A DNA stretch of 62,288 bases, the filler included, from Bipalium vagum (Eukaryota), in assembly GCA_037834085.1 (NCBI GenBank). It is 3 parts of 3 records of this genome, joined end to end, with 100 filler letters (N's around TTAATTAATTAA, not from the genome) between each part and the next. Parts side by side here need not be neighbours in the genome. Positions count along the whole stretch, not along the records: positions 1 to 25,865 come from JBBMKC010170006.1; 2 more parts are not named here. The stretch is one strand, 5' to 3'. Numbering within the stretch: position 1 is the stretch's first letter; each line of letters opens with the position of its first letter. The notes beneath the pieces are model-generated. The model was not told the DNA's origin. It did not search any database and saw only the letters and a program-made list of their open reading frames with translations. The position numbers and the translations under genes are program-made. Positions 4,145 to 25,865 of the stretch are shown here, in pieces.

Positions 4145-5033
4145 TCACATTGAAATGGTTTTTTTGCAGATGTTTTCTTGCTGGAACCAGTCGATGGAGC
4201 CCTTTCTCGAGGTTATGGAAATTCCGAAAAGGTTTGCTAAGGCCTGAGTCTCTTTGTTTGGCTTTCCACCCCAAAATGTTCCTGAAATGATAAAGTGCCA
4301 TTTATTGACTTTTATTTGTTCAATCAGAATCTTCAAATCAAATTGATCCGTGGTCAAAATGCCGAAAACAAGACCCCTTTTCCCAATGTCATTGGAGTAA
4401 CTTTTAATGCTTCGGTAAAAATCTAAATAGTGTGTACAAGCTCCTGTGATTAAAAACGTGACCAGATTGTTTGCCAAGACGAAATAATGAAGGGTTTTAT
4501 TATTGAAATGGGACACGAATTCCCATTTTGGCAAAACAACCATTCTGCTGTTTAAGTAAGACCCCTCTGCGACAATGATGTTGTTTTTGCTGTCAATTTT
4601 TATGGCATTCGATTTACCACCCTTCAAAATTTCATAGACCGATGCAGGCCCACGACTCATGCTAATGTTGACATTCTTCAATATTTGGTAACGAGGTCTA
4701 CTGACCCCTGCGTTTAACTAAAACAATAAAATATACTATAAAATAAGATATAACGTTAACCTTTCCCTTAAATCGATTATTGACAAATATATTGACTTGA
4801 CCGCACTCAGTATTGAATTGACATATATCAAGATAGGCAAACAGAGAACATTTCCAACCCCTGGAATCGTATATGAAAGCCTTGCACCTGACAGACTCAC
4901 ATGCAAGAGCACATGTGATGGAGTTGGGTAATATAATGTTGGTCAAGCTTTGGGATGCACAGGACTGAATTTTCTCATAGTGAACGTTGCCCTTGACATT
5001 CGTTATTAAAACCGTAATTGCGACGAGAAGCAT
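4145..5033 (-). CDS. Secreted protein: signal peptide + PAN/apple domain + TCAF N-terminal-like domain, copy 1 (exons 5033-4761 and 4717-4145, 281 aa)
   Basis: Hydrophobic start MLLVAITVLITNVKG; PAN cysteine pattern CALAC..V.CKAFIY....WKC.L; 43-nt phase-0 GT..AG intron at 4718-4760 joins two open frames; same structure in the paralog at 11730-12640. Confidence 0.85.
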
Positions 5034-5149
5034 TTTCGAAAAGTGTTCTGCAAAAATGAAAATGCATTGCATCATGTCGTTATTTATGAGATACAAAGAG
5101 GAGAATAGAGCTGAAGAAGAACAAGTACGGCAACAAATTTCCATATTGT

Positions 5150-5680
5150 TGACAAGGGTGTCTGTTGTTTTGGGTATGAATAAACAAAGAGAGTCTGCGT
5201 TCCTCAGACCGATTTCCAAACAATATTTGATGAAATGCTTTTATTTGTGAAGACAAAAGATTCGTTCTCATCGGTTCCTCTCACAATTGCTCTGGTAGAC
5301 AAAACTTTTTTCATCTACGGCTGTATCAGAGGGCGAATGCGGCGTTTCTGTCTCCGTCATTGTCTTAGAGTGAGACATGATTCCTTCGGAGGAAAAATAT
5401 ATTTTGCAGCTGATTCTCAGAAAAATAAAAGTTTACAATTAATGAGGAAACAGTAAACGATTCTTGTTCCATTCCACAAAATGAGACTTGCTTACCATTT
5501 TCCAGGGTAGCACTTGTGTTACCTTCTCCTTTAGAAAAATAGCCGTCACCGATCATGTTTCACTTTCACGTAACAACTTCTCTCTGAAGAGACTTTCATT
5601 ATTGAGTTCCCAATATTTCTCAACGAATAGGTTCAGGTCGTACATATCTTTGGAAACAATGCCTGGAGGAGGGTAAGCAT
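5150..5680 (+). pseudogene. Divergently oriented PAN-like pseudogene (homologous to minus strand ~11290-11610)
   Basis: Across frameshifts reads CEDKRFVLIGSSHNCSGRQ..SSTAVSEGECG./FCLRHC, followed by a GTGAG donor. Confidence 0.35.
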
Positions 5681-5689
5681 ATCAGTATG

Positions 5690-6400
5690 AAAAACTTTCG
5701 ATTTCCTAAATCTTATTGCTGATACTGTTAAACTCTGCCCTCCTGTGAATAAAAAGATTTATAACGGTGGTTTGAGTGACTTTGGCTTCAAATTTATTCA
5801 TAAAGCTGGTTCAAAGTCGCTTCCTATCAATGTAAGACCGTGGAATAAATGTAAAGATTCTCGTGTCTGCAGACGCTGTCACTTTTCTGACGAATCAATG
5901 ACGCATGTATTGCAAAGTTGTTTTCCGAACATGTCATTTTGTACAGATCGTCATAATGTTTGTTTAGAGGAAATTGCTGATGCACTGATATTATTGTGGT
6001 CATGGACAAGAAATGTGAGCTCTTGAGAAATTGCAACGAACGTGTTGATCTTTTGATCACACATGTTGAGAAAAAATGATTTTTCTCATTGATGTCAAAT
6101 GTCCGATGGATATCCTGGAAACTTTCAGGAATTCAGATGAATTCAATTTACCTAAATACGCAGATCTTCGTAATCGATTTCAAGTATTGAAGCCTGATTA
6201 TAAAGTTGTACTGCATACATGCATAATTGGGTCCCTAGGAACAGTACCGACAAAACAGTTGATGTTTTGGAGAAGATCGGTGTACGGATGTCAAAAATTG
6301 GTCCACTTCTCAAGGAATGTGCAACATAAAATATTACATAATCGATAAAGATTTGCTAGTGCCATGTTACAGGAATACTGAGATCTATTTAGACCTATGA
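5690..6400 (+). mobile_element. Decayed 3' end of a REL-endonuclease non-LTR retrotransposon (R2/R4/NeSL-type)
   Basis: CCHC knuckle CRRCHFSDESMTHVLQSC, then RHN, RVDLLI, LIDVKCP, KY and IIGSLG; frameshifted. Confidence 0.9.
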
Positions 6401-6499
6401 TATTCCCCGATGTCAACAAAGCTGGGCGAAGAAGGCTAAAGCAAAATTCTACTAAAGCTGAAGAGCTCAGGTGACAAATATCCATGCAGATCTACGTTG

Positions 6500-6650
6500 T
6501 CCTGAAGAAATAAACTCAAAATAAACTAGAATCAGCATGAAAATTTTAGCCAATAGAATTAAAGCAAAAAATTATAAGCTTTATTCAAAATAAATATGCA
6601 CAAAGCAAGCATGTCATATCTTAGGAACGGAAACTTATGAATTACCCTAA
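6500..6650 (-). mobile_element. Mariner 5' end / TIR fragment
   Basis: Aligns by eye with the terminus at 24490-24622 (gaatcagc..., gaattaaagcaaaaa..., aaatatgcacaaa, ttaccct). Confidence 0.6.
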
Positions 6651-7029
6651 TTTACAAAGTTTCGGTTTAGTAGCTTTACAACTTTAAAATAACCTAAGGC
6701 TTTGACTATTTAGTTTTGTTTGGCTGAACTGTTGCCAGATGAAGATTGTTATATACTGGTAATATTTAAAATTTTAATATGTATTTACTTTTATTTTAGA
6801 GTATGCATCGATTTTTCGTGAGTGAGAATTGAAGAGCGAGTCAAAATTGTACAATTGAAATATAAATATAAATTTAACAATCCTTATCTGACATTGGAGA
6901 GTTCGTCTTGTGTCATGATCACAGCTTCTGCTTGTGTCGTAGCTAGATTGGATTCTATTTCTTCTCCGAAAATGTGACATGTACAAATTACTTGAAAATG
7001 TTGAAAACTTATTCTTTGTATGTTTTTAA

Positions 7030-7330
7030 TCAATTACATCAACTTTCCCCAATGCTCTTTATATGTGATGACTCTCTTGCACATCACGGACGAAGAAGCT
7101 CAAGAATGGATATAGAAAAATTTTCTTAGAAAGAGGATTTAAAGAAGAGCGGCCATTGATTGGTCACAGAGATGACAGGACCTTATCCATGGACCTTTTG
7201 TGTGTTGTGCAGAGTTTATTCAAAACCAATTCCTTCATTGCAGGATTTAAAACAATAAATCATGGATGGACTTGCAAATATGCAAAACAAATTCTGTAAA
7301 AATTTTGCTTCTTTGTTCCTTTTACTAATC
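7030..7330 (+). mobile_element. Tc1/mariner transposase fragment
   Basis: RRAAIDWSQR*QDL resembles GR.G..WPPRSPDL. Confidence 0.5.
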
Positions 7331-8269
7331 TGGAATTTATAGTATCTGAAGTTCTTGATACCATTTTAATATTTATTCTGATGATATGGCGGAGTAGATT
7401 TTCCGTGTGTTCGTATATGTCAAAAAATTGCTTCTCAAGACTGTAGGACTACCCTGTCCTGAAGAATCTAATGTTGTTTTCCGATCAAAATTGATAATAT
7501 TTCGTCAATATTTCACTCAAACATGTTAGAAAGAATAATCTTGAGAACAACACCCCTCCATAGCAGTGAGCGTATAAAAGCGAGCGGTGTTTGCTGCAGG
7601 TTGTGATTTCATCAACGATGCGACTTCAATTTTAATGAAATTAACCTCAAATACCTGCCTGGAGACTAAAGACAGACCCAGTGATTGATCGAAACTAAGA
7701 CCAGTCCGAAGTAAAACGGTTTTTTAATTAAAGGCTTACACAAAAATTCAATAAATTGGTCGTCACTAAACTTCGTTCATATTAAAGTGCAATTTCACAA
7801 TTATCTCGGATGAAGTTTATTATTTACCTTTTGTTTTTTTAAAGTTTTCCAAGCATTTTCAAGACAGTACCGCTGATGTGGTTCGACAAAACGATGATAT
7901 AAATGCGTTGCTGTCATTGGGGACGCTCGAAGGAGAAAATGTAAGTTTTGATTATTAAATCAATATTGTTTTGGTTTGAAAACTCTCGGCCTTTTTTGAA
8001 GACCGCTATAATTTTCTTTTATTTTTTTCAGTGTGAGAATTTTAATTCTTAAAAATTTGGACTTTTTTGGTCTCAAAAGAGAAAAGAAATTTTATTACGA
8101 AAAATAGAACCGGAAAAATCAATTTTGATTAATTTGTTCTTTTCTTATTAATTAATAAAATTCTTTGGTAAAGTTTTCCGACATAATTCACTTTTATCGC
8201 ACTTGTTTTAATATTCCAATTAATTCAACTTCGAACGGCGCTCGTTTGATCGAACTATCTTTGTTTTAG

Positions 8270-8476
8270 ATCGCCAAACTTCGCACGGCAGTCCAGTCGA
8301 TCCCCGGAGAGTCCGTTTTTGGCAAGTACCGATTCCTGCCACTCTTCTTCGCGCTGGGGGCTCTCATCGAGTTCAGCATGATCAAGCTGACGGTGAACGG
8401 CGTCAACTTTTACTCGACCTACAAACGGCGCCACGGGATAAGTGTGCCCGAAGGAGAACACGACGATTTGACTTGA
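8270..8476 (+). CDS. SMIM4: SMIM4/UQCC5 (complex III assembly factor, sloth1-like), copy 1 coding exon; start codon not located
   Basis: IAKLRTAVQSIPGESVFGKYRFLPLFFALGALIEFSMIKLTVNGVNFYSTYKRR...-TGA matches SMIM4 (PG..FG.YRFLP.FF.LG..E..MIK.....FY..Y.R). Begins right after the acceptor ttgttttAG. Confidence 0.9.
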   Translation: MAKLRTAVQSIPGESVFGKYRFLPLFFALGALIEFSMIKLTVNGVNFYSTYKRRHGISVPEGEHDDLT

Positions 8477-9252
8477 TTGTGTGGTGAAAATAAATGTTTG
8501 TTTGGTTTTTGAGAGGATTTTTCTCGTTGGATATTTCTTTAGAAGAGAGCAGTGGTATCTCTTAGATAGAAACACTGCGGCTGCGTAAAAATGAGTAAAA
8601 TGTCGTCGGTGCCATGGCCACATTCTCCCGGTTATGAATTATGTGTCACTTCTGAGCCCTGGTGGTTAAGATCAGGACAAGAAGAGGAACTCTTTTTTTA
8701 TCGTCGCTGAGGTCCGGTGAATAAACCAAGCAATGAAGACACCTCGGCCATACTTCCCTGTCTTCGTTGCCGTCGTTGATTGACCATTTCCCAATCTCAT
8801 TATTGGATTATCTTAAAGGAAGACCGTTCCGTTTTTTTGTGCAAACACGGTGCAAAGGGTTGGTGGAATCAATAGTTACCAGGAACACGTTGTCCAAGTT
8901 TATTTCGTTAGATTATCGACCCCTTTTGTAATGTTTGTTACGACCTTACGTCACAAAGGTATTTTATTATTGACGGAGATGAAGCGTTCCTACTACCAAG
9001 GTAAAAGTCTTCAGGAGCCTCCATCATCCTTCACCTCAATCCTTGACACATTTACCTGTGGTGATGACTGTTTCAAAGTGTCTGGAGCTCGTTGTTCTGG
9101 GAAGTACTTCTCAGTGAATTTTCCAGTGCTTAGACTTGGAAGTGACGAAGTGTCTTTGAGGACAGAGAGGGCCCAGTTGACGTTGTGGTTCGATCGATGG
9201 CAATTGTCTTCGGCCTGTCCGCATGAGTCTTCGCTGCTGTCTTTGTTACACC

Positions 9253-9490
9253 GCCAATTGGCCGGAGAACGCAGCTCAATTTCCGGGGATAAAATGCTCT
9301 GGTCTTAACTGATTGCTTTCCTTTTATATCTCATCGATTTACCCTGCACCCTTTTCGCATAATTCCAAATTATTTTCATTAGCTGTTGACTGTCATTTGG
9401 GACACTCAAGATCGTCTTAAAATTCACTGTCATTTATCACAAGGGTAGGAAGCACTCTTAAACGGATTTTAGAACCGAAATCTCCGAATT
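9253..9490. repeat. ~240-bp dispersed repeat; inverted copy at 13086-13325
   Basis: The reverse complement aligns colinearly with 13086-13325 (aattcggagattt, gagtgcttccta, cagtgaattttaagacga, gagatataaaag, ctccggcc). Confidence 0.85.
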
Positions 9491-9779
9491 GACATTGTTA
9501 CCCTACCCCTAAAATTGAATCCGTGGACATTGTTTTAAAATGTCGAGGATCAGATAATGAGGGTCGCATAAAAGTCGTGGCTATTTGAAAGCGAAACAGT
9601 TCACTCTTACCGAAGGATATTGAACCAGCTTTTATTGATTATAAAATGGTTTCATTCTTAAGTGATGAATACCGTTGGCTCATTTTATAAGGATTCATTT
9701 TTCAAGATAAGCACTTTTCGTGATGGAGTCGTCAATCGGAGTTTCCAGGAAACCAATTTAGTATGGTCTCAATGAAAAG

Positions 9780-10550
9780 GGAGGTATTGACCACTCATCT
9801 GTTGCTCCCAAAATCCTTATTTGTTTTGGATCTCACCTAAAACATGGAAAACCAAGAAAATCATGTGAACGATTCACTGATGTCGTTCTCTGTGAATATC
9901 TACGGACCATTTTTTCTTTTTTGAAAGAATGCTCTGAGTACTGCACTCAATTCGAGGGGTAAGTGTGGATGGTATGTTGGTACTGACCAGTGACCATCTT
10001 TATGAGTCATGAAAATTTTTCGTTTTACACTGCTATGAAAACTGGGTACACTGAGCTCGGGATTTTGCTGCTTCTTTCCCTTATGTCAAGACGAGATCGA
10101 ATTTGATTGGATCAAAACAATCACAATGGAACATTATCTGATCAATACAACAGTACTCAATCAAAACAAAAGTCCAAAAGAAAAGACATTTAGCAAGTGA
10201 TCACAGTGAATCAGTCGATCACAACTCCAATCACAAATGAAATAAATAATCAAAAAATATGAAACTGTTAATCGCTTTGATGGCGATGGGTCCTCAGGTC
10301 GTTGGATGAGCCCAACCGGTTCGCTCATAAACGTGCAGATCCCATCGTTGGTCCTGTCGCATAGCAATCAGCAATTTAATCTAAAGACCTCCAAAATAGT
10401 TTCCAAATCTGAAAATTTCTGGCAGTCCATTTCCATTACCTTTTATAATGGTCAAATGACTATTCAGTCGTCGACCAATATTCTTATCAAAGAACGTTCA
10501 TTCTCTTTTTAGACGTAAGTTACTAAATCAATCTAGATTGCGGACCTGGC
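9780..10550 (+). pseudogene. Decayed PAN-like / Ser-Thr-Asn-rich secreted-protein paralog
   Basis: ECSEYCTQFEG followed by a GTAAGT..CAG mini-intron, a low-complexity linker and an open 3' frame (10306-10512). Shares words with minus strand 10760-11150. Confidence 0.35.
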
Positions 10551-11729
10551 AAATTCCATAACCTCACATTCAAAGTCTTGGAAGTAGTGCTTGGTTACCA
10601 ATAGGTCGGTAGAAATCTGAGTGCGCCCTTCTTTCTCTCATTCCTCTAGTTAAGAGTCTAGTGCAAAGTAACTCGCACAGTTTGATGATTGATTCAAACA
10701 CGTTAACTCATATCACCAATGAAACAATGCATGATGATAATAAGAGTCAAATGAGAGTTAACGATGGGTCTTAAGGGATTTGGTCGTTTATCTACAAGCC
10801 GGTTGGGCTTTTCTAACATCTCAAGGACCGATTGCCAACAAGTGTTGAGCTGATGATTGTTTTACTAAGTTATTTTTCTTTGTGTTTATTGCAAAAAAAG
10901 AATAAAAAGGCATCTTGAAATATCTGTGATCAACAAATAATCATTTGGTCGGTTTCATTGATTATTTGTTATCATTGATTATTGGTTTACATTTTCTTGA
11001 TTGTTATTTTGTTTGATCGATTGACCTTTTCTTTGATTAATTGGGTTTAGAACAGTCAATCGTTAACTCGAATCATTCATTGATTTTCACTGTGTACCAT
11101 TGTGGTGATTGAATAAAGATTTAAATGTGATCATTTTGATTCCATTCTCTTTGAATAGGTTATTAAGTAAAGTTAAACAGTCAGTAAAACTTGGGCCTAA
11201 AAGTTACAAACATTCTCATAATAGTAACGTGTAACAAGACGATATCATAAATGTATATTGTTCACATTCACACAAAGGTATGTTTAGTCTCATTTTGCGC
11301 AGAGGAAGCGGAATTGTTCGCTGTTTCTCTCTAAAATAAAAACTTTCATTTTCTCAGACAAGAGACTGCAGATAAAAGGTCTCATTTCTCACTCTAGGAC
11401 AATGACGGAGACAGAAACGCCGCATTCGCCCTCTGATACAGTCGTAGGTGAAAAAAGTTTTTGTCTACCAGAGCAATTGTGAGAGGAACCGATGAGAACG
11501 AATCTTTTGTCTTCACAAATAAAAGCATTTCATCAAATATTGTTTGGAAATCGGTCTGAGTAACGCAGACTCCCTTTGCTTATTCATACCCAAGACAACA
11601 GACACCCTTGTCAAGAATATGGAGATTTGTTGCCGTACTTGCTCTTCTCCAGTTCTATTCTCCTCTTTGTCTCTCATAAATAACGACATGATGCAATGCA
11701 TTTTCATTTTTCCAGAGCACTTTTCGAAA

Positions 11730-12640
11730 ATGCTTCTCGTCGCAATTACGGTTTTAATAACGAATGTCAAGGGCAACGCTCACTATGAGAAAATTGAGTC
11801 CTGTGCATCCCAAAGCTTGACCAACATTATATTACCCAACTCCATCGCATGTGCTCTTGCATGTGGGTCTGTCAAATGCAAGGCTTTTATATACGATTCC
11901 AGGGGTTGGAAATGTTATCTGTTTGCCTATCTTGATATATGTCAATTCAATACCGAGTGCGGTCATGTTAACATATTTGTCGATAATCGTTTTAAAGGAA
12001 AGGTGCACCTTTTACATAATTTTTTTAGTATATCTTATTGTTTCAGTTAAGCGCGGGGGTCAGTCGATCTCATTTCCAAATATTGAAGAATATCAACATT
12101 GATTTGACTGGTGGGTATGCATCGGTTTTCGAAATTATCAATGGGGATAGGTTGAGTGCCATAAAATTTGACAGCAAAAACAACGTCATTGTCGCAGAGG
12201 GGTCTTATTTAAACAGCAGAATGGTTGTTTTGCCAAAATGGGAATTCGTAGGCAATTTCAATGAAAAAAGTCGTCGGTTTTCTGCTTTGGCAAACAATCT
12301 TGTCACGTTTTTAACCACAGGAGCTTGTACTCATTATTTAGATTGTTACCGAAGCGTTATAAACTGCACTAATTACATTGATGAAAAGGGTCTTGTTTTA
12401 GGGATTTCGGGAATGGATCTGTTTGATTTGAAGATTTTGATTGAACAAATAAAAGTCAATAAATGGCATTTTATCATTTCAGGAACATTTTGGGGTGTAA
12501 AGGCATATTCAGACACTCAGGTTCTAGCAAACCTTTTTGGAATTCGTATAACTTCGAGAAAGGGCTCCACCGATTGGTTTCTGCAAGAGCAAATTTCGAA
12601 GAACATTTCAACTGTTTCTTCTGTAAAATGTACCTTTTAA
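11730..12640 (+). CDS. Secreted protein: signal peptide + PAN/apple domain + TCAF N-terminal-like domain, copy 2 (exons 11730-12002 and 12047-12640, 288 aa)
   Basis: Inverted paralog of 4145-5033; 44-nt phase-0 intron gtgcac..tttcag at the same codon; both frames open. Confidence 0.85.
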
Positions 12641-13599
12641 ACTTTCGAAAAAATTGTTTTCACACCTTTGCTGACTTGATCTTTGAAACTTCAGAAGTAA
12701 TATAATTGCGATTGTTACGTTCAGAGGTCATTGGTCTTCCGTGTACTTTTTTTTTAGTTTATTATATGTGCTTGTCGAATTTCCAAGATTAGATCAGGAT
12801 CCGCATTTAGGAACCGACTTAGGTTATTACCTAAAAAAGGAATTGATATTAAGAATATTGGTGTAAGACTGAGGAATCGTTTGAGGCGCCTCAGTGGACT
12901 TCCATAAAAACAGAGCTAGCAAGATTTTTATTTGATTGAAAATTATTGATTTGAAACGTCAGAAGAAATTTATTGCGGGAAACAAAATCAGTTTATGATT
13001 ATGTCAGTTTTTATGTGACAGGAGCCCACAATCTCACCCTCGATATGTCAAAACAGAATCAATGTTTGGGGTAAGGTAACCCTGACAATTCGGAGATTTT
13101 TGGTTCGAAAGCCGTTTAGGAGTGCTTCCTACACTTTTGATAAATGGCAGTGAATTTTAAGACGACCTTGAGTACTGTAAAGGACAGTCAACAATTAATG
13201 AAAATAATTTGGAAATATACGTGAAGGGTGCACGGTAAATCAATGAGATATAAAAGAAAAGCAATCAGCTAAAACTAGAGCATTTATACCGGGAAATGGA
13301 GCTACGTACTCCGGCCGATTGGAAGTGTATCGAAATTACGTGTGGCATTCACATGGTCTTCATATTGTGACGTGAACTTTGTATAACCGAGTCGTTTAGA
13401 AGTTTAACTTTGACCTTTGGTCCAAAGCTCAGAATTCGACCTCCAAAGCGATGTATCATCTTTGGATTTGTTTGTGATTAGCAACATTCAATTGGAGTCC
13501 CACTTGGTGATAGATTGACCATGTTCTGCTTTCAATTGAACTGTGGGAAACTATGATCGCAGAAAATCTAAAATAAGAACGTTCAAAACAAGAGTCTCT

Positions 13600-14153: not shown

Positions 14154-14891
14154 ATCACTGTTTTTGTTTTTTTTTATAATGCAACGTAAATGTCAATTCA
14201 GAAAACTGCCAGAAGTCTGAGGATCTATATTTAACCAGGAAGATTGATGACAGGAGCTTTTCACCTGAAAATAAACGTTTCCTCTCTCAACGTTCCGGAG
14301 CTCTTCAGTGTGAATTGAATGAGAAGAATTGATTTGGAACCTCACTTTGTTTCACTCTCTGATTCGGTCCAACGAAATTGGCTTATCTCTTCCCTTGTCT
14401 TCCAGCTTCATTTATGCCCAAACCACTGTCATCATCATTTCGTCTTGATCCTCTCTACATATGAAATCGGGAAGGGGTCAATCACTGACTGCTTTAGAGA
14501 CCAAGGGAGAATACATCCCACTTACTTGATATATTCTTTATGGATCTTCCTAGAGAAGTCTCGAGCCAAGGATAAGGAGATTAAGATTAAGTTCTGGACA
14601 GAAACGATCGATGATCTTTCCACAAAGAATCAAAGATGAGTCCTCGTCATTTCACATCCATTTTCAGAAATGAAAGAAAAGTGTCCTGATTTCAACTGCC
14701 AGGGGTCAGAATTGATGAACAATTCACGACCGAGAGAATGTGGCAATGGCACCGACGATATTTTACTCTTGCCAAAACCGGAGTGCTCTCATAAAAGATG
14801 GAGTGCTACTTACCCCTTCGAACGAAGACTCTAATCAGAACCGAAAAACAAACTTTCAAAAACCAAAAAAAAAATTATTTTCACCACACAA

Positions 14892-15098
14892 TCACGTCAA
14901 ATTGTCGCGTTCTCTCTCGGACAAACTTATGCCCTGGCGTCGTTTGTAGGTTGAGTAAAAGTTGACGCCGTTCACCGTCAGATTGATCATGCTGAACTTG
15001 ATGAGAGCCCCCAGCGCGAAGAAGAGCGGCAGGAATCGGTACTTGCCAAAAACGGACTCTCCGGGGATCGACTGGACTGCCGTGCGAAGTTTGGCGAT
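14892..15098 (-). CDS. SMIM4: SMIM4/UQCC5 copy 2 coding exon (inverted duplicate)
   Basis: Same 207-nt exon, acceptor and TGA as copy 1; carries E->K and K->N in the E.(S/I)MIK motif and a divergent C-terminal tail. Confidence 0.85.
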   Translation of the reverse strand: MAKLRTAVQSIPGESVFGKYRFLPLFFALGALIKFSMINLTVNGVNFYSTYKRRQGISLSERERDNLT

Positions 15099-15395
15099 CT
15101 AAAACAAAGACAGGTCGGTCGATTGGAATATTAAAACAAGCGCGATAAGAGTATTTGGACGAAGGAAAACTTTACCAAAGAATTTAATTAATTAAGAAGA
15201 AAAGGACGAATGAATCGAAATTGATTTTTCTGGTTTCATTTTTCGAAGTAAAATTATTTCTTTTTTCTTTTGAGACCGAAAATGGTCCAACTTTTAAAGA
15301 ATTAAAATTTTAACACTGAAAGAATTTAAGGAAAAGTCTCGCGTTCTTCAATAAGGGTGTAGAGTTTTCAAAGCTAAACAATATTGATTTAATTA

Positions 15396-15664
15396 TCAAA
15401 ATTGCGGTCTCTTCTGCGAGTGGGTAGCGAAGTATTCTTTGACAAGAATATCTTTAAAACAAACACAATGAGAGCAATCCGAAACCAGATTTTCATCTAA
15501 AAAGAAAATGATCAATACAATTGCCCTGTTCTGTCTCTTCAAATATTAAATGGAACACATCATTTTGGGCATTTCCTTCGGGATATGTCCCGTCAAGTTG
15601 GGTTGCTTTGGATGCCGATAACATAATGATCGACAGCAACACCACAATGAAGACAGCTCTTCAT
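15396..15664 (-). pseudogene. Small secreted-protein-like gene with a 1-nt frameshift after ATG and a 22-nt intron
   Basis: ATG-a-RAVFIVVLLSIIMLSASKA looks like a signal peptide; removing gtattgatcattttctttttag (15497-15518) restores a frame to ...SDCSHCVCFKD... Confidence 0.35.
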
Positions 15665-18479: not shown

Positions 18480-21300
18480 TTCAAAAGAGTCATCTCAAAA
18501 GGAGATCTTACAAAATGGTACCACTCTTTGCTACAAGTTTCATATTGTTAATCTCTAAGGGACGAATCTCTTTCCAAACCTTTATGAGACTTATGTTGTG
18601 GTCAAAGTGCGCTAAAGGCTCTTTGGGCTCATAGAACGTCTTAAGAGTGGTATTTTAGAAGATTATGTTTTGCCCCGTCTGCTAGTGAAAATGACATCAT
18701 CAAGGTCTTGACAAAAAGCAATATATGTGGACCTTAAAGAGGATCAGTTTATACATACATTGATCTCTGCAAATGGCTTCTCAAATTGCACAAAACGGTC
18801 TATTTTTTGAAGGGAAACTCATTCAGCCGTTGACAAAGCGGGAATTTTTTGAAAAATATTACTTCTCCAGTTCCACCTAGGAACAATGGTATTCGTGGAC
18901 CATGATTCCTTAGCCAGTGAAGAAATCGTTCAGCGTGTTTGAAACCGAAAGATGCCTTTAACTGACCAGGTCTTGTCAAAGGAGAATTTGAATCTAACAA
19001 TGTCAGAAACAGACCCGCTTCGACTCAAGATGTGAAGCCCCACTGGGCACTCTCAGACGACCTCTGAGTTGTACCAATCATGACAAGGATCACTGTTAAG
19101 AAGGACTGTTTTGCTAATTCCTTAACTGCTGTCGCCTCGATCTGGCTTCATTTGACAATTGCTCAATTACCAAACGTCCTCTCAAAATCATTTCGCGCTC
19201 AGCTGAACGCCGACGAAGGGGAGTGCTTCCACTTGAGCGGAAGGCGATAATGATCCGGCAGTAATCACATTCCGCGCTGCTCTAACGCTGTCCAAATTAA
19301 ATCTCTCAGTTCTGAAAACCAACAGACACCAATTCTCAACCGCTTTCCTATGGAAATTAAGCCAACACCCGGAGGCCCACTTCCCACAGTACCCTGTCTC
19401 CATTTCACAGCCTTTGGAGAGTGGCAGACCACTAATGCCAATCTTCGCCATTTCCCCTTCAGTGCACATTACGATCATCATATTACGCTGACATCAATGG
19501 ACCAAGGGAGAAAGGGAGAAAGAGCCACGGGGGCTTCCAGATTGGAAGGATGGTCGTTGCCATCGGACGGCACGGCGAGAGGCCGAGGCGAATGGACAGT
19601 GAACCCACGCTCCCGGCTACGACTTCTCGCTCAATTAAACCCTAAATGGTTCGAAAACAAAAGCACTCGACTTCGGAAGGAACTTTATTTAATCAAGACA
19701 AAAACGTTTCACACGACCCTCCTCAATCCTCGTATCGGCCGAATCTGGAATGGCGAAATAATAATCAAAAACCAANNNNNNNNNNNNNNNNNNNNNNNNN
19801 NNNNNNNNNNNNNNNNNNNNNNNNNNNNNNNNNNNNNNNNNNNNNNNNNNNNNNNNNNNNNNNNNNNNNNNNNNNNNNNNNNNNNNNNNNNNNNNNNNNN
19901 NNNNNNNNNNNNNNNNNNNNNNNNNNNNNNNNNNNNNNNNNNNNNNNNNNNNNNNNNNNNNNNNNNNNNNNNNNNNNNNNNNNNNNNNNNNNNNNNNNNN
20001 NNNNNNNNNNNNNNNNNNNNNNNNNNNNNNNNNNNNNNNNNNNNNNNNNNNNNNNNNNNNNNNNNNNNNNNNNNNNNNNNNCACTAAGGGCTTTGTGACA
20101 GAGGCTCCACCAACCTTCTCTTCGTGAGCTCCCAATCGTCCCATCCGTTGACCGGGGTGAAGCGCTTCTTCCCGTTCCTGAAACGATAAAGATTTTCAAT
20201 GTGTATTTATCCCTTATGACAAAGTCCTCATGAAGATGGTCAGTGTGAAGGTGGTGACTGTGGGCGATGAATATTGAGGCTGACCATCTTTCAATTCGTG
20301 GAGAAATGAAAGGATTACTTTTCAATGAACAGCGAAATGGGAAAGGCGTTGACCAGACCCCAGAGTGACAGAGCAGACAATAATCAGATTTCCTCTCTAA
20401 AGACCCTCAAGGTGTATCTTTAACAAAAAAGGGCTTCTTAAAGAAGCGTATTCGTAAAAATGAAGCAGCAAAAGATTCTCATCAGTCACGACCTTTTCAG
20501 TTTATTGTCCCTATCTCATAGTAGCAAATTATCAATCTCAGAGGCCTAAAGGTCTCGCAAACAGAGATCACCCATCATTCTACTTTCTTGACACATTGCC
20601 TTCACACGTTCTTCTCTTTTTATCTCTGGCGGAGCCTCTCCTTTGCCCCTCTAGTGACAGATGAGGCCGAAGGCCAATGAGTCCAGATTGGACTCTGGAT
20701 GCATTTTAGCAAGAATTCGGCCCACTCAGCGACATTATCACGACGAAATGTTATCGCCCTCTTTTTCTGGAAGAGGAGATTATCCCAAGCTACTTTGAAC
20801 AGGTAAAACATTTCCATGGAGAGCGGCAATAAAAGCCTCAGCCGCTCGCTCAGCGCCGGAATGATGTTGACATATAAAACTAATGGAAATGGAAGCGAGA
20901 CTCACGGTTTGTGGGCCAGATTCCAGTCGTCGAATCCAGCGAGCCGAGAAAGTCTTTCGGAAGCCATCCTGAATAAATCATGCTCAAAAATGCCATTAAA
21001 AGGTCGTAAAGCAGTCAGCATTATCAAGCCCTGCAATAATTGGTTCCGGTTCTCACTCTGCCTCAGAGCGGCCGGCCGCAGGGACAGCGACACGGAGGAG
21101 GAGCGGCTCGTTGCGCGCTCCGCTCGTCTCCGCGCTCCGTCCACCCCTTTCGCTGGCTCGGTCGAGCCTCGGTAGCGTGAGAACGGCCATCACCACCCCG
21201 TGCTTTTACGACGACGTTACCTGGCTGCTGCTCCCGCTCCCGCAGAGAAGCTCTCGACCATGACCGGAGACAGCTGGGCAATAAAAAGCCCCATTATCAT
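18480..21300 (-). mobile_element. Highly decayed non-LTR retrotransposon body (RT region spans the N gap)
   Basis: Relatively GC-rich block with degenerate RT-like motifs in the expected order (RP..., YFAIPD similar to LAFADD, VITAGSLSPSAQVEAL similar to the R2-type thumb). Confidence 0.45.
19776..20081. other. Assembly gap (306 N)
   Basis: Run of N. Confidence 1.
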
Positions 21301-24622: not shown

Positions 24623-25785
24623 ATATATGACATCATTATCAAAATGACATCTGTTTCAGTTTGGGGTAAGCAACGATGATTGCACGTACTTTGAGATCAA
24701 TTTGCTTTGATTGGTATCATCTAATGGAGAACCCAAAGACGTGACTGTTGCTTGTCTTCTGGTATATATGAGAGATATTTTGGAAGTTTCTTGGAGTACA
24801 TTTTCTGCACCACTGTCTGGAAAAACAAGATCTCTCACGCAAAAGTCCTCATGTGTGATAAAGTTCAATTGTTCAGGAAAGTATTCAACGAACCATGAAA
24901 TGCCTTGCACGTTCTTCACGAATAATTCAACAAACAAGTTCCATGTGGAAGCCGAAGGACGACCAGGTTCTTTGCACAAGGAGACACACCTTTACTTGGA
25001 TTCGGTAAGCCAATGAAAAACTGCCGTTTTCGAAGGTGACTCATCACCAAGTGTCAATTTTAGACCACTCGGGCATCTTTTCTGTCTCAAAACGGAAAAT
25101 AATACCCTCACATTTTCTTTTTTGTGTCCTACGAACAACGGTACCCTCATAACGTTTGTCCAAGTCCTCTCCGCGGGCCCTCGGTGCTCTCTGTGTCGTC
25201 TCAAACTTTTTGTTTGTTTTAATTCCCATTTTCGGAAATAATTACCCATGTCCAATTAAAACAAACATTGTTATCTAATTGATCTCTCCCCAGCTCTGCG
25301 GAAATCAATTAACCTAAGGGACATTACTGTAATCTTAATTGTTCCAACAAATATCCAGCCTGGAAAGAATGGGCAAAAGAGCAAGTTCTTTTTGCACAGG
25401 AATTTATCGTTTAAACGAGAATCGAGTTTACAGGTTTCCCTGAAAGGTGCCAGCTGATTCTGCTTAGTCCTTCCTGTCTCGCTGGGACCGGGCTCATTAG
25501 CAAATGCAGACGCAAACGAGTGCCCTGAACAAAAGGCCTTCTCATAGTCGTACTGTTGACTTTAATTCTTTGCTCTCAACAAGATGAGAGGCCTCTCCTC
25601 TTCAGATTCAGCACTGAGATTTTTAACCCGTCGCGTTCATCCCCACACGTGCAAGGGTATTCTCTGCCGTTCCCATTGTCCACCTGGGAAGGCGACGACC
25701 ATCTGAAATGAAAAGAGGTCCGTCCAACCCCCTGAGAATATCTCATAATATCCTGTAATCCTGCGTTGTAACTATTTTTATGAAT

Positions 25786-25787
<2 letters not shown>

Positions 25788-25865
<78 letters not shown>
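25788..25865. repeat. (AAT)n microsatellite at contig end; further copies at 25966-26037 and 43202-43270
   Basis: Near-perfect trinucleotide runs abutting the spacers. Confidence 0.95.

What the first reader, a model, noticed from the sequence alone, without database searches (positions are those of the whole stretch)
4145..12640. Secreted PAN + TCAF-N-like protein pair: an unusual domain fusion
Seen: two intact two-exon paralogs, each with a signal peptide, a PAN/apple domain (exon 1) and a ~190-aa exon 2. Knowledge/inference: exon 2 follows the N-terminal module of TCAF1/FAM115 (M60-like peptidase family). IIVAEGSYLNSRMVVL resembles VLIAASSYGRGRLVVV, LANNLVTFL resembles FLLNAVGWL, FIISGTFWG resembles LLIGGQAWD, and LFGISIT resembles VAGIYFT. 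There is no M60 peptidase domain. I do not recall this architecture; it may be a lineage-specific secreted recognition or adhesion family.
Basis: partly seen in the sequence, partly recalled or inferred. Interest (0 to 1): 0.8.

Follow-up and report, generated by a model that had tools for sequence, protein, structure and literature searches.

The report
Secreted PAN plus TCAF-N-like gene family
Two head-to-head genes each encode a secreted protein made of a PAN/apple domain and a domain related to the N-terminal module of TCAF and IMPa M60 peptidases but with no peptidase part, and they belong to a family of several hundred such genes in this unidentified invertebrate genome.

Summary

**Gene models.** Both two-exon genes are intact, at the stated coordinates. 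The introns are 4718-4760 and 12003-12046, both GT..AG.

**Exon 1.** It encodes a hydrophobic leader and a 7-Cys PAN/apple domain. Pfam PAN_1 matches 25 of 45 paralogs. All leading fold matches are PAN/apple structures.

**Exon 2.** It has no Pfam match, yet three tests tie it to the TCAF/IMPa N-terminal module:
- A profile of 56 paralogs found named TCAF homologs among only 43 hits in 1.84 billion proteins.
- hhalign against TCAF N-terminal units gave probability 97.9%, E 4e-13, over 177 columns.
- The AlphaFold model matches only IMPa residues 75-292 in the PDB (Z 12.7; next best 3.7), and ESM Atlas clusters carrying PF27016 TCAF_N (TM about 0.7).

**No peptidase part.** Both ORFs end in a stop codon, and no Peptidase_M60 match lies on this contig.

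**New here.** The layout is family-wide. At least 150 copies were scored in the 440-Mb genome, out of 600-900 candidates. Median pairwise identity is 38%, and dN/dS among the closest three copies is 0.25-0.45.

**Most likely function.** These are non-catalytic secreted binding proteins, possibly binding glycoproteins. Expression and splicing could not be tested, because no RNA run was found. I rate it a new variant of a known kind.

The parts
4761..5033 (-). Copy A exon 1: start codon, hydrophobic leader, 7-Cys PAN/apple domain (91 codons)
   Evidence: PAN_1 E 0.02; family profile E 2e-32
4718..4760 (-). Copy A intron, 43 nt, GT..AG, shifts the frame
   Evidence: comparative support
4145..4717 (-). 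Copy A exon 2: TCAF_N / IMPa_N_2-like alpha/beta domain (190 codons plus TGA stop)
   Evidence: family profile E 1.7e-74; TCAF-unit profile E 3.3e-05
5034..5386 (-). Copy A upstream region, 92-100% identical to that of copy B in 50-nt windows (putative promoter and 5' UTR)
   Evidence: I1, I7
11376..11729 (+). Copy B upstream region shared with copy A and, from about 11300, with the copy on contig C104232 (putative promoter and 5' UTR)
11730..12002 (+). Copy B exon 1: start codon, hydrophobic leader, 7-Cys PAN/apple domain (91 codons)
   Evidence: (PAN_1 E 0.0029)
12003..12046 (+). Copy B intron, 44 nt, GT..AG, shifts the frame; read-through stops at 12048-12050
12047..12640 (+). Copy B exon 2: TCAF_N / IMPa_N_2-like alpha/beta domain (197 codons plus TAA stop)

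Best explanation
Each gene encodes a secreted protein of about 270 residues after leader cleavage, with no catalytic domain. It has an N-terminal PAN/apple domain joined to one divergent copy of the alpha/beta domain that forms the N-terminal module of TCAF proteins and of the bacterial M60-type mucinase IMPa (Pfam TCAF_N PF27016 / IMPa_N_2 PF18650). The two genes are young members of a very large, old and diversified family of compact two-exon genes in this genome.

Shown here: the gene models, the two domain identities, the absence of a peptidase part, the family size and spread, and purifying selection.

Inferred: the protein enters the secretory pathway and is stabilised by disulfides, probably including one between the two domains. 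It acts as a soluble binding or recognition molecule, with both domains providing binding surfaces. Glycoproteins or glycans are the most plausible ligands, because PAN/apple domains include lectins and the IMPa counterpart of exon 2 carries a ligand-binding exosite. The expansion into hundreds of 30-50% identical paralogs fits a repertoire role, such as recognition of microbes, prey or mucus, or adhesion.
For: Gene models and selection. PAN: PAN_1 hits in 25 of 45 paralogs, best E 4.8e-06. The AF2 model of exon 1 (pLDDT 81.7) has PAN/apple structures as all its leading Foldseek matches: Sarcocystis lectin SML-2, the HGF N domain, factor XI and prekallikrein apple domains, and plasminogen. TCAF_N, by sequence: hmmsearch with 56 paralogs over 1.84 billion representatives gave 43 hits. 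They include a bichir TCAF homolog cluster (E 1.7e-16), amphioxus TCAF2-like with Peptidase_M60 (2.5e-07), a crinoid TCAF homolog with Peptidase_M60 (6.7e-04), and a crinoid protein with 9 tandem units (1e-22). hhalign of the paralogs against 23 TCAF units gave probability 97.9%, E 4.1e-13, 177 columns. The reverse search with the TCAF-unit profile hits both window ORFs (E 3.5e-07 and 3.3e-05). TCAF_N, by structure: the exon 2 AF2 model (pLDDT 84.6, pTM 0.82, built from paralogs only) matches only IMPa in Foldseek/PDB (E 2e-05, next 0.1). An exhaustive alignment to 48,161 chains gave 5kdv_A residues 75-292 at Z 12.7, rmsd 3.4 A over 178 residues, with the next hit at Z 3.7. ESM Atlas gave TM 0.68-0.71 to eight clusters annotated TCAF_N or IMPa_N_2. 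No peptidase: stop codons end both genes, and none of 19 Peptidase_M60 matches in the genome is on this contig. Secretion: a hydrophobic leader in 33 of 33 paralogs. Exon 1 averages 1.69 N-glycosylation sequons against 0.93 in shuffles; for exon 2 the excess is small, 2.66 against 2.26. Cys counts are odd in each exon (32 of 37 and 29 of 37) but even in total in 28 of 37 genes. Family: at least 150 scored matches for each exon, from 597 and 903 first-look candidates. Median pairwise identity is 38% and no pair exceeds 94%. Binding role of the homologous domain: an IMPa crystal structure has a ligand bound at an exosite in the PF18650 domain (PMC10550946).
Against: There is no expression or splicing evidence. 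The only run holding the locus is DNA-like contigs with no spliced form. The window's exon 2 has no Pfam hit, and only 5 of 56 paralogs touch IMPa_N_2, all below the cut-off. The G-H-E motif invariant in the TCAF units is F-P-K here, so any function tied to that motif is not conserved. Both window copies depart from the family's cysteine pattern. Copy A lacks the near-invariant Cys at column 100 and copy B lacks the one at column 184. Both have an odd total Cys count, so these two members might be drifting. No ligand, tissue or phenotype is known. The recognition and glycan-binding steps are inference by analogy.
Confidence: 0.7

Rival explanations
1. These two copies, and perhaps many in the family, are drifting or non-functional duplicates. 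The family is real, but copies A and B no longer make a working protein.
For: Copy A has lost the near-invariant Cys at column 100 and copy B the one at column 184. Both have an odd total Cys count, unlike 28 of 37 paralogs. No RNA evidence exists. A few family members carry several stops.
Against: Both ORFs, both splice-site pairs and both start codons are intact. dN/dS is 0.25-0.45 in both exons among A, B and the copy on contig C104232. The upstream 350 nt is 92-100% conserved between copies in 50-nt windows.
Confidence: 0.12
2. The proteins work with the organism's own M60-type peptidases rather than as independent receptors. A free exosite-like domain could act as a decoy, inhibitor or substrate-presenting partner.
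For: The genome holds about 19 Peptidase_M60 ORFs. At least one has a TCAF_N-like N-terminus (TCAF-unit profile E 2e-08). In IMPa the homologous domain carries an exosite (PMC10550946).
Against: The family profile does not hit the genome's own M60 proteins. Hundreds of diversified partners for about 19 enzymes is an odd ratio. No linkage was seen: no M60 gene lies on this contig, and no PAN exon lies upstream of the M60 ORFs.
Confidence: 0.1
3. The multi-copy ORFs are cargo of a transposable element, and copy number reflects transposition rather than gene-family expansion.
For: There are hundreds of copies. Dispersed repeats lie between and beside the two genes.
Against: The copies are old and diverse: median 38% protein identity, none above 94%. 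Similarity between the closest copies stops about 350-450 nt upstream of the start codon and within about 100 nt after the stop. The repeat scan shows no terminal repeats around the units. The proteins carry a leader peptide, an intron and purifying selection.
Confidence: 0.04
4. The likeness of exon 2 to TCAF_N / IMPa_N_2 is convergence on a common alpha/beta sandwich, not homology.
For: Identity is only 10-16%. Single-unit HMM hits are about 15-23 bits each. Pfam IMPa_N_2 is not reached.
Against: Whole-library E-values reach 1e-22, with hits at the same profile positions in every tandem unit. hhalign gives E 4e-13 across the whole domain. IMPa is the only chain out of 48,161 with Z above 4. 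The structural model was built without any TCAF sequence.
Confidence: 0.04

Closest known systems
TCAF1 / TCAF2 (TRPM8 channel-associated factors, FAM115) and their invertebrate homologs
   Same: Exon 2 is homologous to the repeated N-terminal unit of these proteins (Pfam TCAF_N) over its whole length.
   Different: There is one unit here instead of two to nine tandem units. There is no M60-like_N and no Peptidase_M60 domain. This family has a leader peptide, conserved cysteines and a PAN domain. The unit's invariant G-H-E motif reads F-P-K. From my own knowledge of PMC4284226, not re-read here: vertebrate TCAFs are intracellular partners of TRPM8.
N-terminal domain (PF18650, IMPa_N_2) of the Pseudomonas aeruginosa mucinase IMPa, PDB 5kdv / 7jtv
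   Same: It is the only solved structure with this fold: Z 12.7, rmsd 3.4 A, 178 residues, IMPa residues 75-292. In IMPa the domain holds a ligand-binding exosite (PMC10550946).
   Different: IMPa is a bacterial metalloprotease of about 890 residues with a helical and an M60 catalytic domain. Identity is 12%. It has no PAN domain.
Stand-alone TCAF_N proteins of chordates (ESM Atlas cluster 'putative TRPM8 channel-associated factor 2-like', 211 aa)
   Same: A single TCAF_N domain of the same size without a peptidase; TM 0.68 / 0.64.
   Different: The cluster's annotation lists no PAN domain, and no sign of a comparable expansion. Sequence relation to this family was not examined.
PAN/apple-domain binding proteins (Sarcocystis lectin SML-2, Toxoplasma MIC4, HGF N domain, factor XI apple domains)
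   Same: Exon 1 has the PAN fold and cysteine pattern. These relatives bind sugars, heparin or proteins.
   Different: There is a seventh conserved Cys. The PAN domain is fused to TCAF_N, a combination not seen among the Atlas clusters or the papers searched.

Membership tests
TCAF_N (PF27016) / IMPa_N_2 (PF18650) domain superfamily | Significant profile-level sequence match to the N-terminal units of TCAF proteins | tested here: met
   hmmsearch over 1.84 billion proteins returned named TCAF homologs at E 1e-22 to 7e-04. hhalign gave probability 97.9%, E 4.1e-13, 177 columns. The reverse profile hits both window ORFs.
TCAF_N (PF27016) / IMPa_N_2 (PF18650) domain superfamily | Match to the curated Pfam model above its gathering score | tested here: not met
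   PF18650: no hit for either window copy. Only 5 of 56 paralogs hit, best E 0.0033, below 25 bits. PF27016 never appeared in any scan of this Pfam copy and appears to be absent from it, so it could not be tested.
TCAF_N (PF27016) / IMPa_N_2 (PF18650) domain superfamily | Same three-dimensional fold as the solved IMPa N-terminal domain | tested here: met
   5kdv_A residues 75-292: Z 12.7, rmsd 3.4 A, 178 aligned; next chain Z 3.7. Foldseek E 2e-05. TM about 0.7 to TCAF_N clusters. This compares a predicted model, not an experimental structure.
TCAF_N (PF27016) / IMPa_N_2 (PF18650) domain superfamily | Residues invariant in the TCAF units aligned here (G..G, G-H-E, GGG) | tested here: not met
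   In the hhalign columns G-H-E is F-P-K and the GGG stretch is N-W-H. The Asn of the N..(W/F)L motif and the later Trp are kept. Whether these residues define function is not known.
TCAF proteins proper (TCAF1/2 orthologs) | C-terminal M60-like_N plus Peptidase_M60 domains | tested here: not met
   Both genes stop after exon 2. Pfam finds nothing further. None of 19 Peptidase_M60 matches in the genome is on this contig.
TCAF proteins proper (TCAF1/2 orthologs) | Binding and regulation of TRPM8 | not testable with these tools
   This needs experiments. The leader peptide makes an intracellular role unlikely.
PAN/apple domain (PF00024) | Match to Pfam PAN_1 | tested here: inconclusive
   The window copies score 15.1 and 17.9 bits against a cut-off of 21.4. 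25 of 45 paralogs match at E <= 0.01, best 4.8e-06.
PAN/apple domain (PF00024) | PAN fold with its conserved cysteine framework | tested here: met
   Seven conserved Cys, including the C-A..C....C-K-A-F core. The model has pLDDT 81.7. All leading Foldseek matches are PAN/apple structures, with E from 8e-03 and probability 1.0.
Secreted proteins | Cleavable N-terminal signal peptide | tested here: inconclusive
   A crude test only: a 9-residue window with Kyte-Doolittle mean above 1.8 lies within the first 18 residues in 33 of 33 paralogs that start with Met, followed by a small residue (V-K-G in the window copies). SignalP was not available.

The most novel reading that the evidence does not exclude
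A family of several hundred secreted PAN + TCAF_N proteins serves as a diversified extracellular recognition repertoire (innate immunity, or binding of mucus, prey or microbes) in a flatworm-like invertebrate. This would make the TCAF/IMPa N-terminal module an ancient free-standing ligand-binding domain, and would hint at what the uncharacterised N-terminal half of animal TCAFs binds.
Probability: 0.2. Interest if true: 0.7.

Novelty: new variant of a known kind. Interest (0 to 1): 0.5.

Why it matters
The N-terminal module of TCAF proteins has no assigned function. Its only structural and functional anchor is an exosite in a bacterial mucinase. Here the same module is detached from any peptidase, sent outside the cell, fused to a classical binding domain and multiplied several hundred-fold under purifying selection. 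That argues the module works on its own as a binding unit. It also offers many natural variants for testing what it binds. For the organism, a family of this size is likely to be one of its largest, and a candidate for recognition or adhesion biology.

Tried and rejected
- Word-indexed search of 5.8 billion proteins with exon 2: no hit.
- Pfam on both exon 2 copies: nothing.
- PDB sequence search with the family profile: only chance-level TIR-APAZ hits, E 0.08. I rejected these.
- Language-model atlas look-up: no score above 0.84 and no informative family.
- Metagenome contig scans: the alignment was too variable to search with, and a single relative gave no confirmed locus.
- Is exon 2 derived from the genome's own M60 genes? 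The family profile does not hit them. No PAN exon lies upstream of six of them.
- Naming the organism from a COX1 piece: only unnamed fragments, at most 79% identical. Cluster look-ups of the short family hits gave no names.
- No RNA run holds the locus. The one DNA-like run shows short contigs tiling the gene and no spliced form.
- Papers: nothing on PAN with TCAF, nor on PF27016.
- The spliced, joined protein was never submitted to any tool.
Full report
**1. The observation**

The window is AT-rich eukaryotic DNA, 23-48% G+C.

Copy B lies on the + strand:
- Exon 1 starts with ATG at 11730 and is an open 91-codon stretch ending at 12002.
- The next bases are GT.
- The 44 nt to 12046 end in a pyrimidine run and CAG.
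- From 12047 a second frame stays open for 197 codons, to TAA at 12638-12640.

Copy A is the mirror image on the - strand:
- Exon 1 is 5033..4761.
- The intron is 4760..4718 (43 nt).
- Exon 2 is 4717..4148.
- The stop is TGA at 4147-4145.

In both copies, reading through the intron runs into a stop, and exon 2 is in another frame. The two exons can therefore only be joined by splicing.

The two genes are head to head. They form an inverted repeat of about 1.25 kb:
- The roughly 350 nt upstream are 92-100% identical in 50-nt windows.
- Exon 1 is about 95% identical.
- Exon 2 is about 80% identical, in patches.

A third close copy lies on contig C104232. The three pairwise comparisons give dN/dS of 0.25-0.29 in exon 1 and 0.35-0.45 in exon 2. 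These are constrained coding sequences.

**2. A very large family**

*Copy number.* A six-frame search of the window's own assembly (440 Mb, 272,664 contigs) with exon 2 gave 597 first-look candidates. All 150 that were scored were significant (E 1e-128 to 5e-22, 29-85% identity). About 120 had no stop at all. Five of the single stops I checked are the natural terminal stop. A profile of exon 1 gave 903 candidates, and again all 150 scored were significant.

*Layout.* I fetched 60 loci. All 57 with enough upstream sequence have the PAN exon on the same strand, 44-85 nt before exon 2.

*Intron.* A frame-preserving GT..AG intron could be placed in 53 of them, mostly 41-56 nt. Typical sites are ATG|GTaagt and ttttCAG|TT. 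Lengths fall in all three classes mod 3 (22, 17 and 14). That is what an intron gives and a coding linker does not.

*Divergence.* Among 56 intact exon 2 sequences the median pairwise identity is 38% and the maximum is 94%. The count is therefore not inflated by uncollapsed alleles, and the family is old.

*Duplication unit.* Similarity between the closest copies stops about 350-450 nt upstream of the start codon and within about 100 nt after the stop. No terminal repeats surround the units.

**3. Exon 1**

The paralog alignment shows a hydrophobic leader followed by seven conserved cysteines, including the C-A..C....C-K-A-F core typical of PAN modules.

- Pfam PAN_1 scores 15-18 bits on the window copies, below the 21.4 cut-off. 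It matches 25 of 45 paralogs, best E 4.8e-06.
- An AlphaFold model from the paralog alignment has pLDDT 81.7.
- All its leading Foldseek matches are PAN/apple structures. They are the Sarcocystis lectin SML-2, the HGF N domain, factor XI and prekallikrein apple domains, plasminogen, and Eimeria and Toxoplasma PAN modules. E-values are modest (from 8e-03), as expected for 70 residues, but the list is uniform.

**4. Exon 2**

*Negative searches.* Pfam finds nothing in the window copies. The word-indexed search of 5.8 billion proteins also finds nothing.

*Exhaustive profile search.* A profile of 56 paralogs searched over 1.84 billion representatives gave only 43 hits. Most are short unnamed ORFs from environmental assemblies.

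The long hits are informative:

| Hit | Description | E-value |
|---|---|---|
| P0019 | 1886-aa crinoid protein with nine tandem matches | 1e-22 |
| P0028 | bichir cluster whose members are named TRPM8 channel-associated factor homolog | 1.7e-16 |
| P0038 | amphioxus TCAF2-like with M60-like_N and Peptidase_M60 | 2.5e-07 |
| P0042 | crinoid TCAF homolog with the same domains | 6.7e-04 |

Each tandem unit matches weakly (15-23 bits), but always at the same profile positions.

*Profile-profile comparison.* I cut 23 such units into alignment A3. hhalign between the family and these units gives probability 97.9%, E 4.1e-13, over 177 columns, which is the whole domain.

- the strand I-I-V-A-E-G-S-Y..S-R-M-V-V-L,
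- the helix L-A-N-N-L-V-T-F-L,
- H-F-I-I-S-G-T-F-W,
- N-L-F-G-I..I-T.

The TCAF-unit profile in turn hits both window ORFs (E 3.5e-07 and 3.3e-05).

*Structure.* An AlphaFold model built from paralogs only has pLDDT 84.6 and pTM 0.82. It is an alpha/beta sandwich covering residues 7-175.
- Foldseek against the PDB finds only IMPa of Pseudomonas aeruginosa (5kdv, 7jtv, 5kdx, 5kdw; E 2e-05 to 1e-04). The next hit is at E 0.1.
- An exhaustive alignment to 48,161 chains gives 5kdv_A residues 75-292 at Z 12.7, rmsd 3.4 A over 178 residues. The next chain scores Z 3.7.
- The ESM Atlas search returns eight clusters at TM 0.68-0.71 annotated PF27016 TCAF_N or PF18650 IMPa_N_2. They include chordate TCAFs, a 211-aa chordate protein with TCAF_N alone, and bacterial M60 peptidases.

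*Conclusion.* Sequence and structure agree that exon 2 is a divergent TCAF_N / IMPa_N_2 domain.

*How it differs from the TCAF units:*
- The G-H-E motif is F-P-K.
- The glycine run is N-W-H.
- The family has its own conserved cysteines.
- The Ser in I-I-S-G-T is Ala in many paralogs, so no nucleophile is conserved.

**5. No peptidase**

Both genes end at stop codons, and the stop position is conserved within the family (ORFs of 188-215 codons).

The genome does hold about 19 Peptidase_M60 matches, but none lies on this contig. These are large single ORFs of about 740 codons. At least one has a TCAF_N-like N-terminus (E 2e-08 with the unit profile). The family profile does not hit them, and no PAN exon lies upstream of them. 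They are a separate family.

**6. Spread outside this genome**

The same two-exon layout is present in:
- a contig from another public run (P0002, where the intron is read through in frame),
- a JGI metagenome contig of 29% G+C (L069),
- a 291-aa UniParc entry (P0020).

No source names the organism.

The window's genome has a COX1 contig that uses AAA at canonical Asn positions, AGA at a canonical Ser position, ATA at Ile and TGA at Trp. That is the echinoderm/flatworm mitochondrial code. The canonical positions come from my own knowledge of COX1 motifs; the codons come.

The nearest named homolog of its M60 genes is from the planarian Schmidtea mediterranea, at 41% identity. Together with the 41-56 nt introns, a flatworm is my tentative guess. 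It is no more than that.

**7. How it most likely works**

*Shown.* The gene encodes a leader, a PAN domain and a TCAF_N-like domain, with no catalytic domain.

*Signs of the secretory route:*
- All 33 paralogs that start with Met have a hydrophobic leader.
- Exon 1 carries more N-glycosylation sequons than shuffled sequence, 1.69 against 0.93.
- Exon 2 shows only a small excess, 2.66 against 2.26.
- The cysteine counts are striking. Each exon has an odd number in most genes (32 of 37 and 29 of 37), but the sum is even in 28 of 37. This suggests a disulfide between the two domains.

*Inferred.* The protein is a soluble binder.
- PAN/apple domains are binding modules for sugars, heparin or proteins (named structures).
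- The IMPa counterpart of exon 2 holds a ligand at an exosite in one crystal structure (PMC10550946).
- A glycoprotein or glycan ligand is therefore the most plausible.
- Hundreds of diversified paralogs suggest a repertoire.

I put about 0.7 on 'secreted non-catalytic PAN + TCAF_N binding protein', about 0.35 on glycan or glycoprotein ligands, and about 0.2 on a recognition repertoire.

**8. Caveats**

- No RNA data exist for the locus. The one run holding it is DNA-like and shows no spliced form.
- The two window copies each lack one near-invariant cysteine and have odd totals of 9 and 11. They may be atypical or drifting members, although their dN/dS argues against decay.
- Exon 1 and the upstream region are more alike among the three closest copies (dS about 0.13 for every pair) than exon 2 (dS 0.18-0.44). 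This points to gene conversion of the 5' half or to strong promoter constraint.
All searches and folds were done exon by exon.

**9. Verdict**

The domains are known. What is new, as far as the searches here show, is their fusion, the loss of the peptidase context, the secretory setting and the scale of the expansion. I rate it a new variant of a known kind, with interest 0.5.

Noticed in passing
G000 contigs C250379, C21457, C234219, C111689 and others (L062-L065, L070-L072): About 19 Peptidase_M60 matches sit in single open frames of about 740 codons. None has a Met near the start of the frame, so an upstream exon is likely. At least one has a TCAF_N-like N-terminus. The nearest named homolog is from Schmidtea mediterranea at 41% identity.
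   Followed up: partly
L066 (G000:C253947:276-1577) and other COX1 matches: A COX1 contig uses AAA at canonical Asn positions, AGA at a canonical Ser position, ATA at Ile and TGA at Trp. This is the echinoderm/flatworm mitochondrial code. Several other COX1-like pieces carry many stops of all three kinds, as nuclear copies of mitochondrial DNA would.
   Followed up: partly
window 4145-5386 and 11376-12640, with L002: Among the three closest copies dS is about 0.13 in exon 1 for every pair, but 0.18 to 0.44 in exon 2. The 350 nt upstream are 92-100% identical in 50-nt windows. The 5' half looks homogenised by gene conversion or held by promoter constraint.
   Followed up: partly
G000 contigs C175144, C263916 (head to head); C80821, C261550 (tandem): Other contigs also carry two family members. 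Two of these four pairs are head to head like the window's pair, with about 2 to 8.5 kb between the starts.
   Followed up: no
family-wide (alignments A1, A2): The cysteine count is odd in each exon (mostly 7, and 3 or 5) but even in total in 28 of 37 genes, suggesting an inter-domain disulfide. The window copies total 9 and 11.
   Followed up: partly
G000 contigs C263916, C5595, C195029, C200511, C208056, C259795: In some paralogs exon 1 and exon 2 lie in one open frame of about 300-335 codons. The intron is either a stop-free multiple of three or has been lost.
   Followed up: no
window 7946-8526 / 14842-15401 and 9292-9524 / 13053-13285: Further inverted repeat pairs (82-91% identical) lie between and beside the two genes. 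They are probably copies of dispersed repeats. Their ORFs have no Pfam match.
   Followed up: no
window 19776-20081; 25763-25865; 1-1000: There is an N gap of 306 bases, an (AAT)n microsatellite at the end of the piece, and a first kilobase of only 23% G+C.
   Followed up: no
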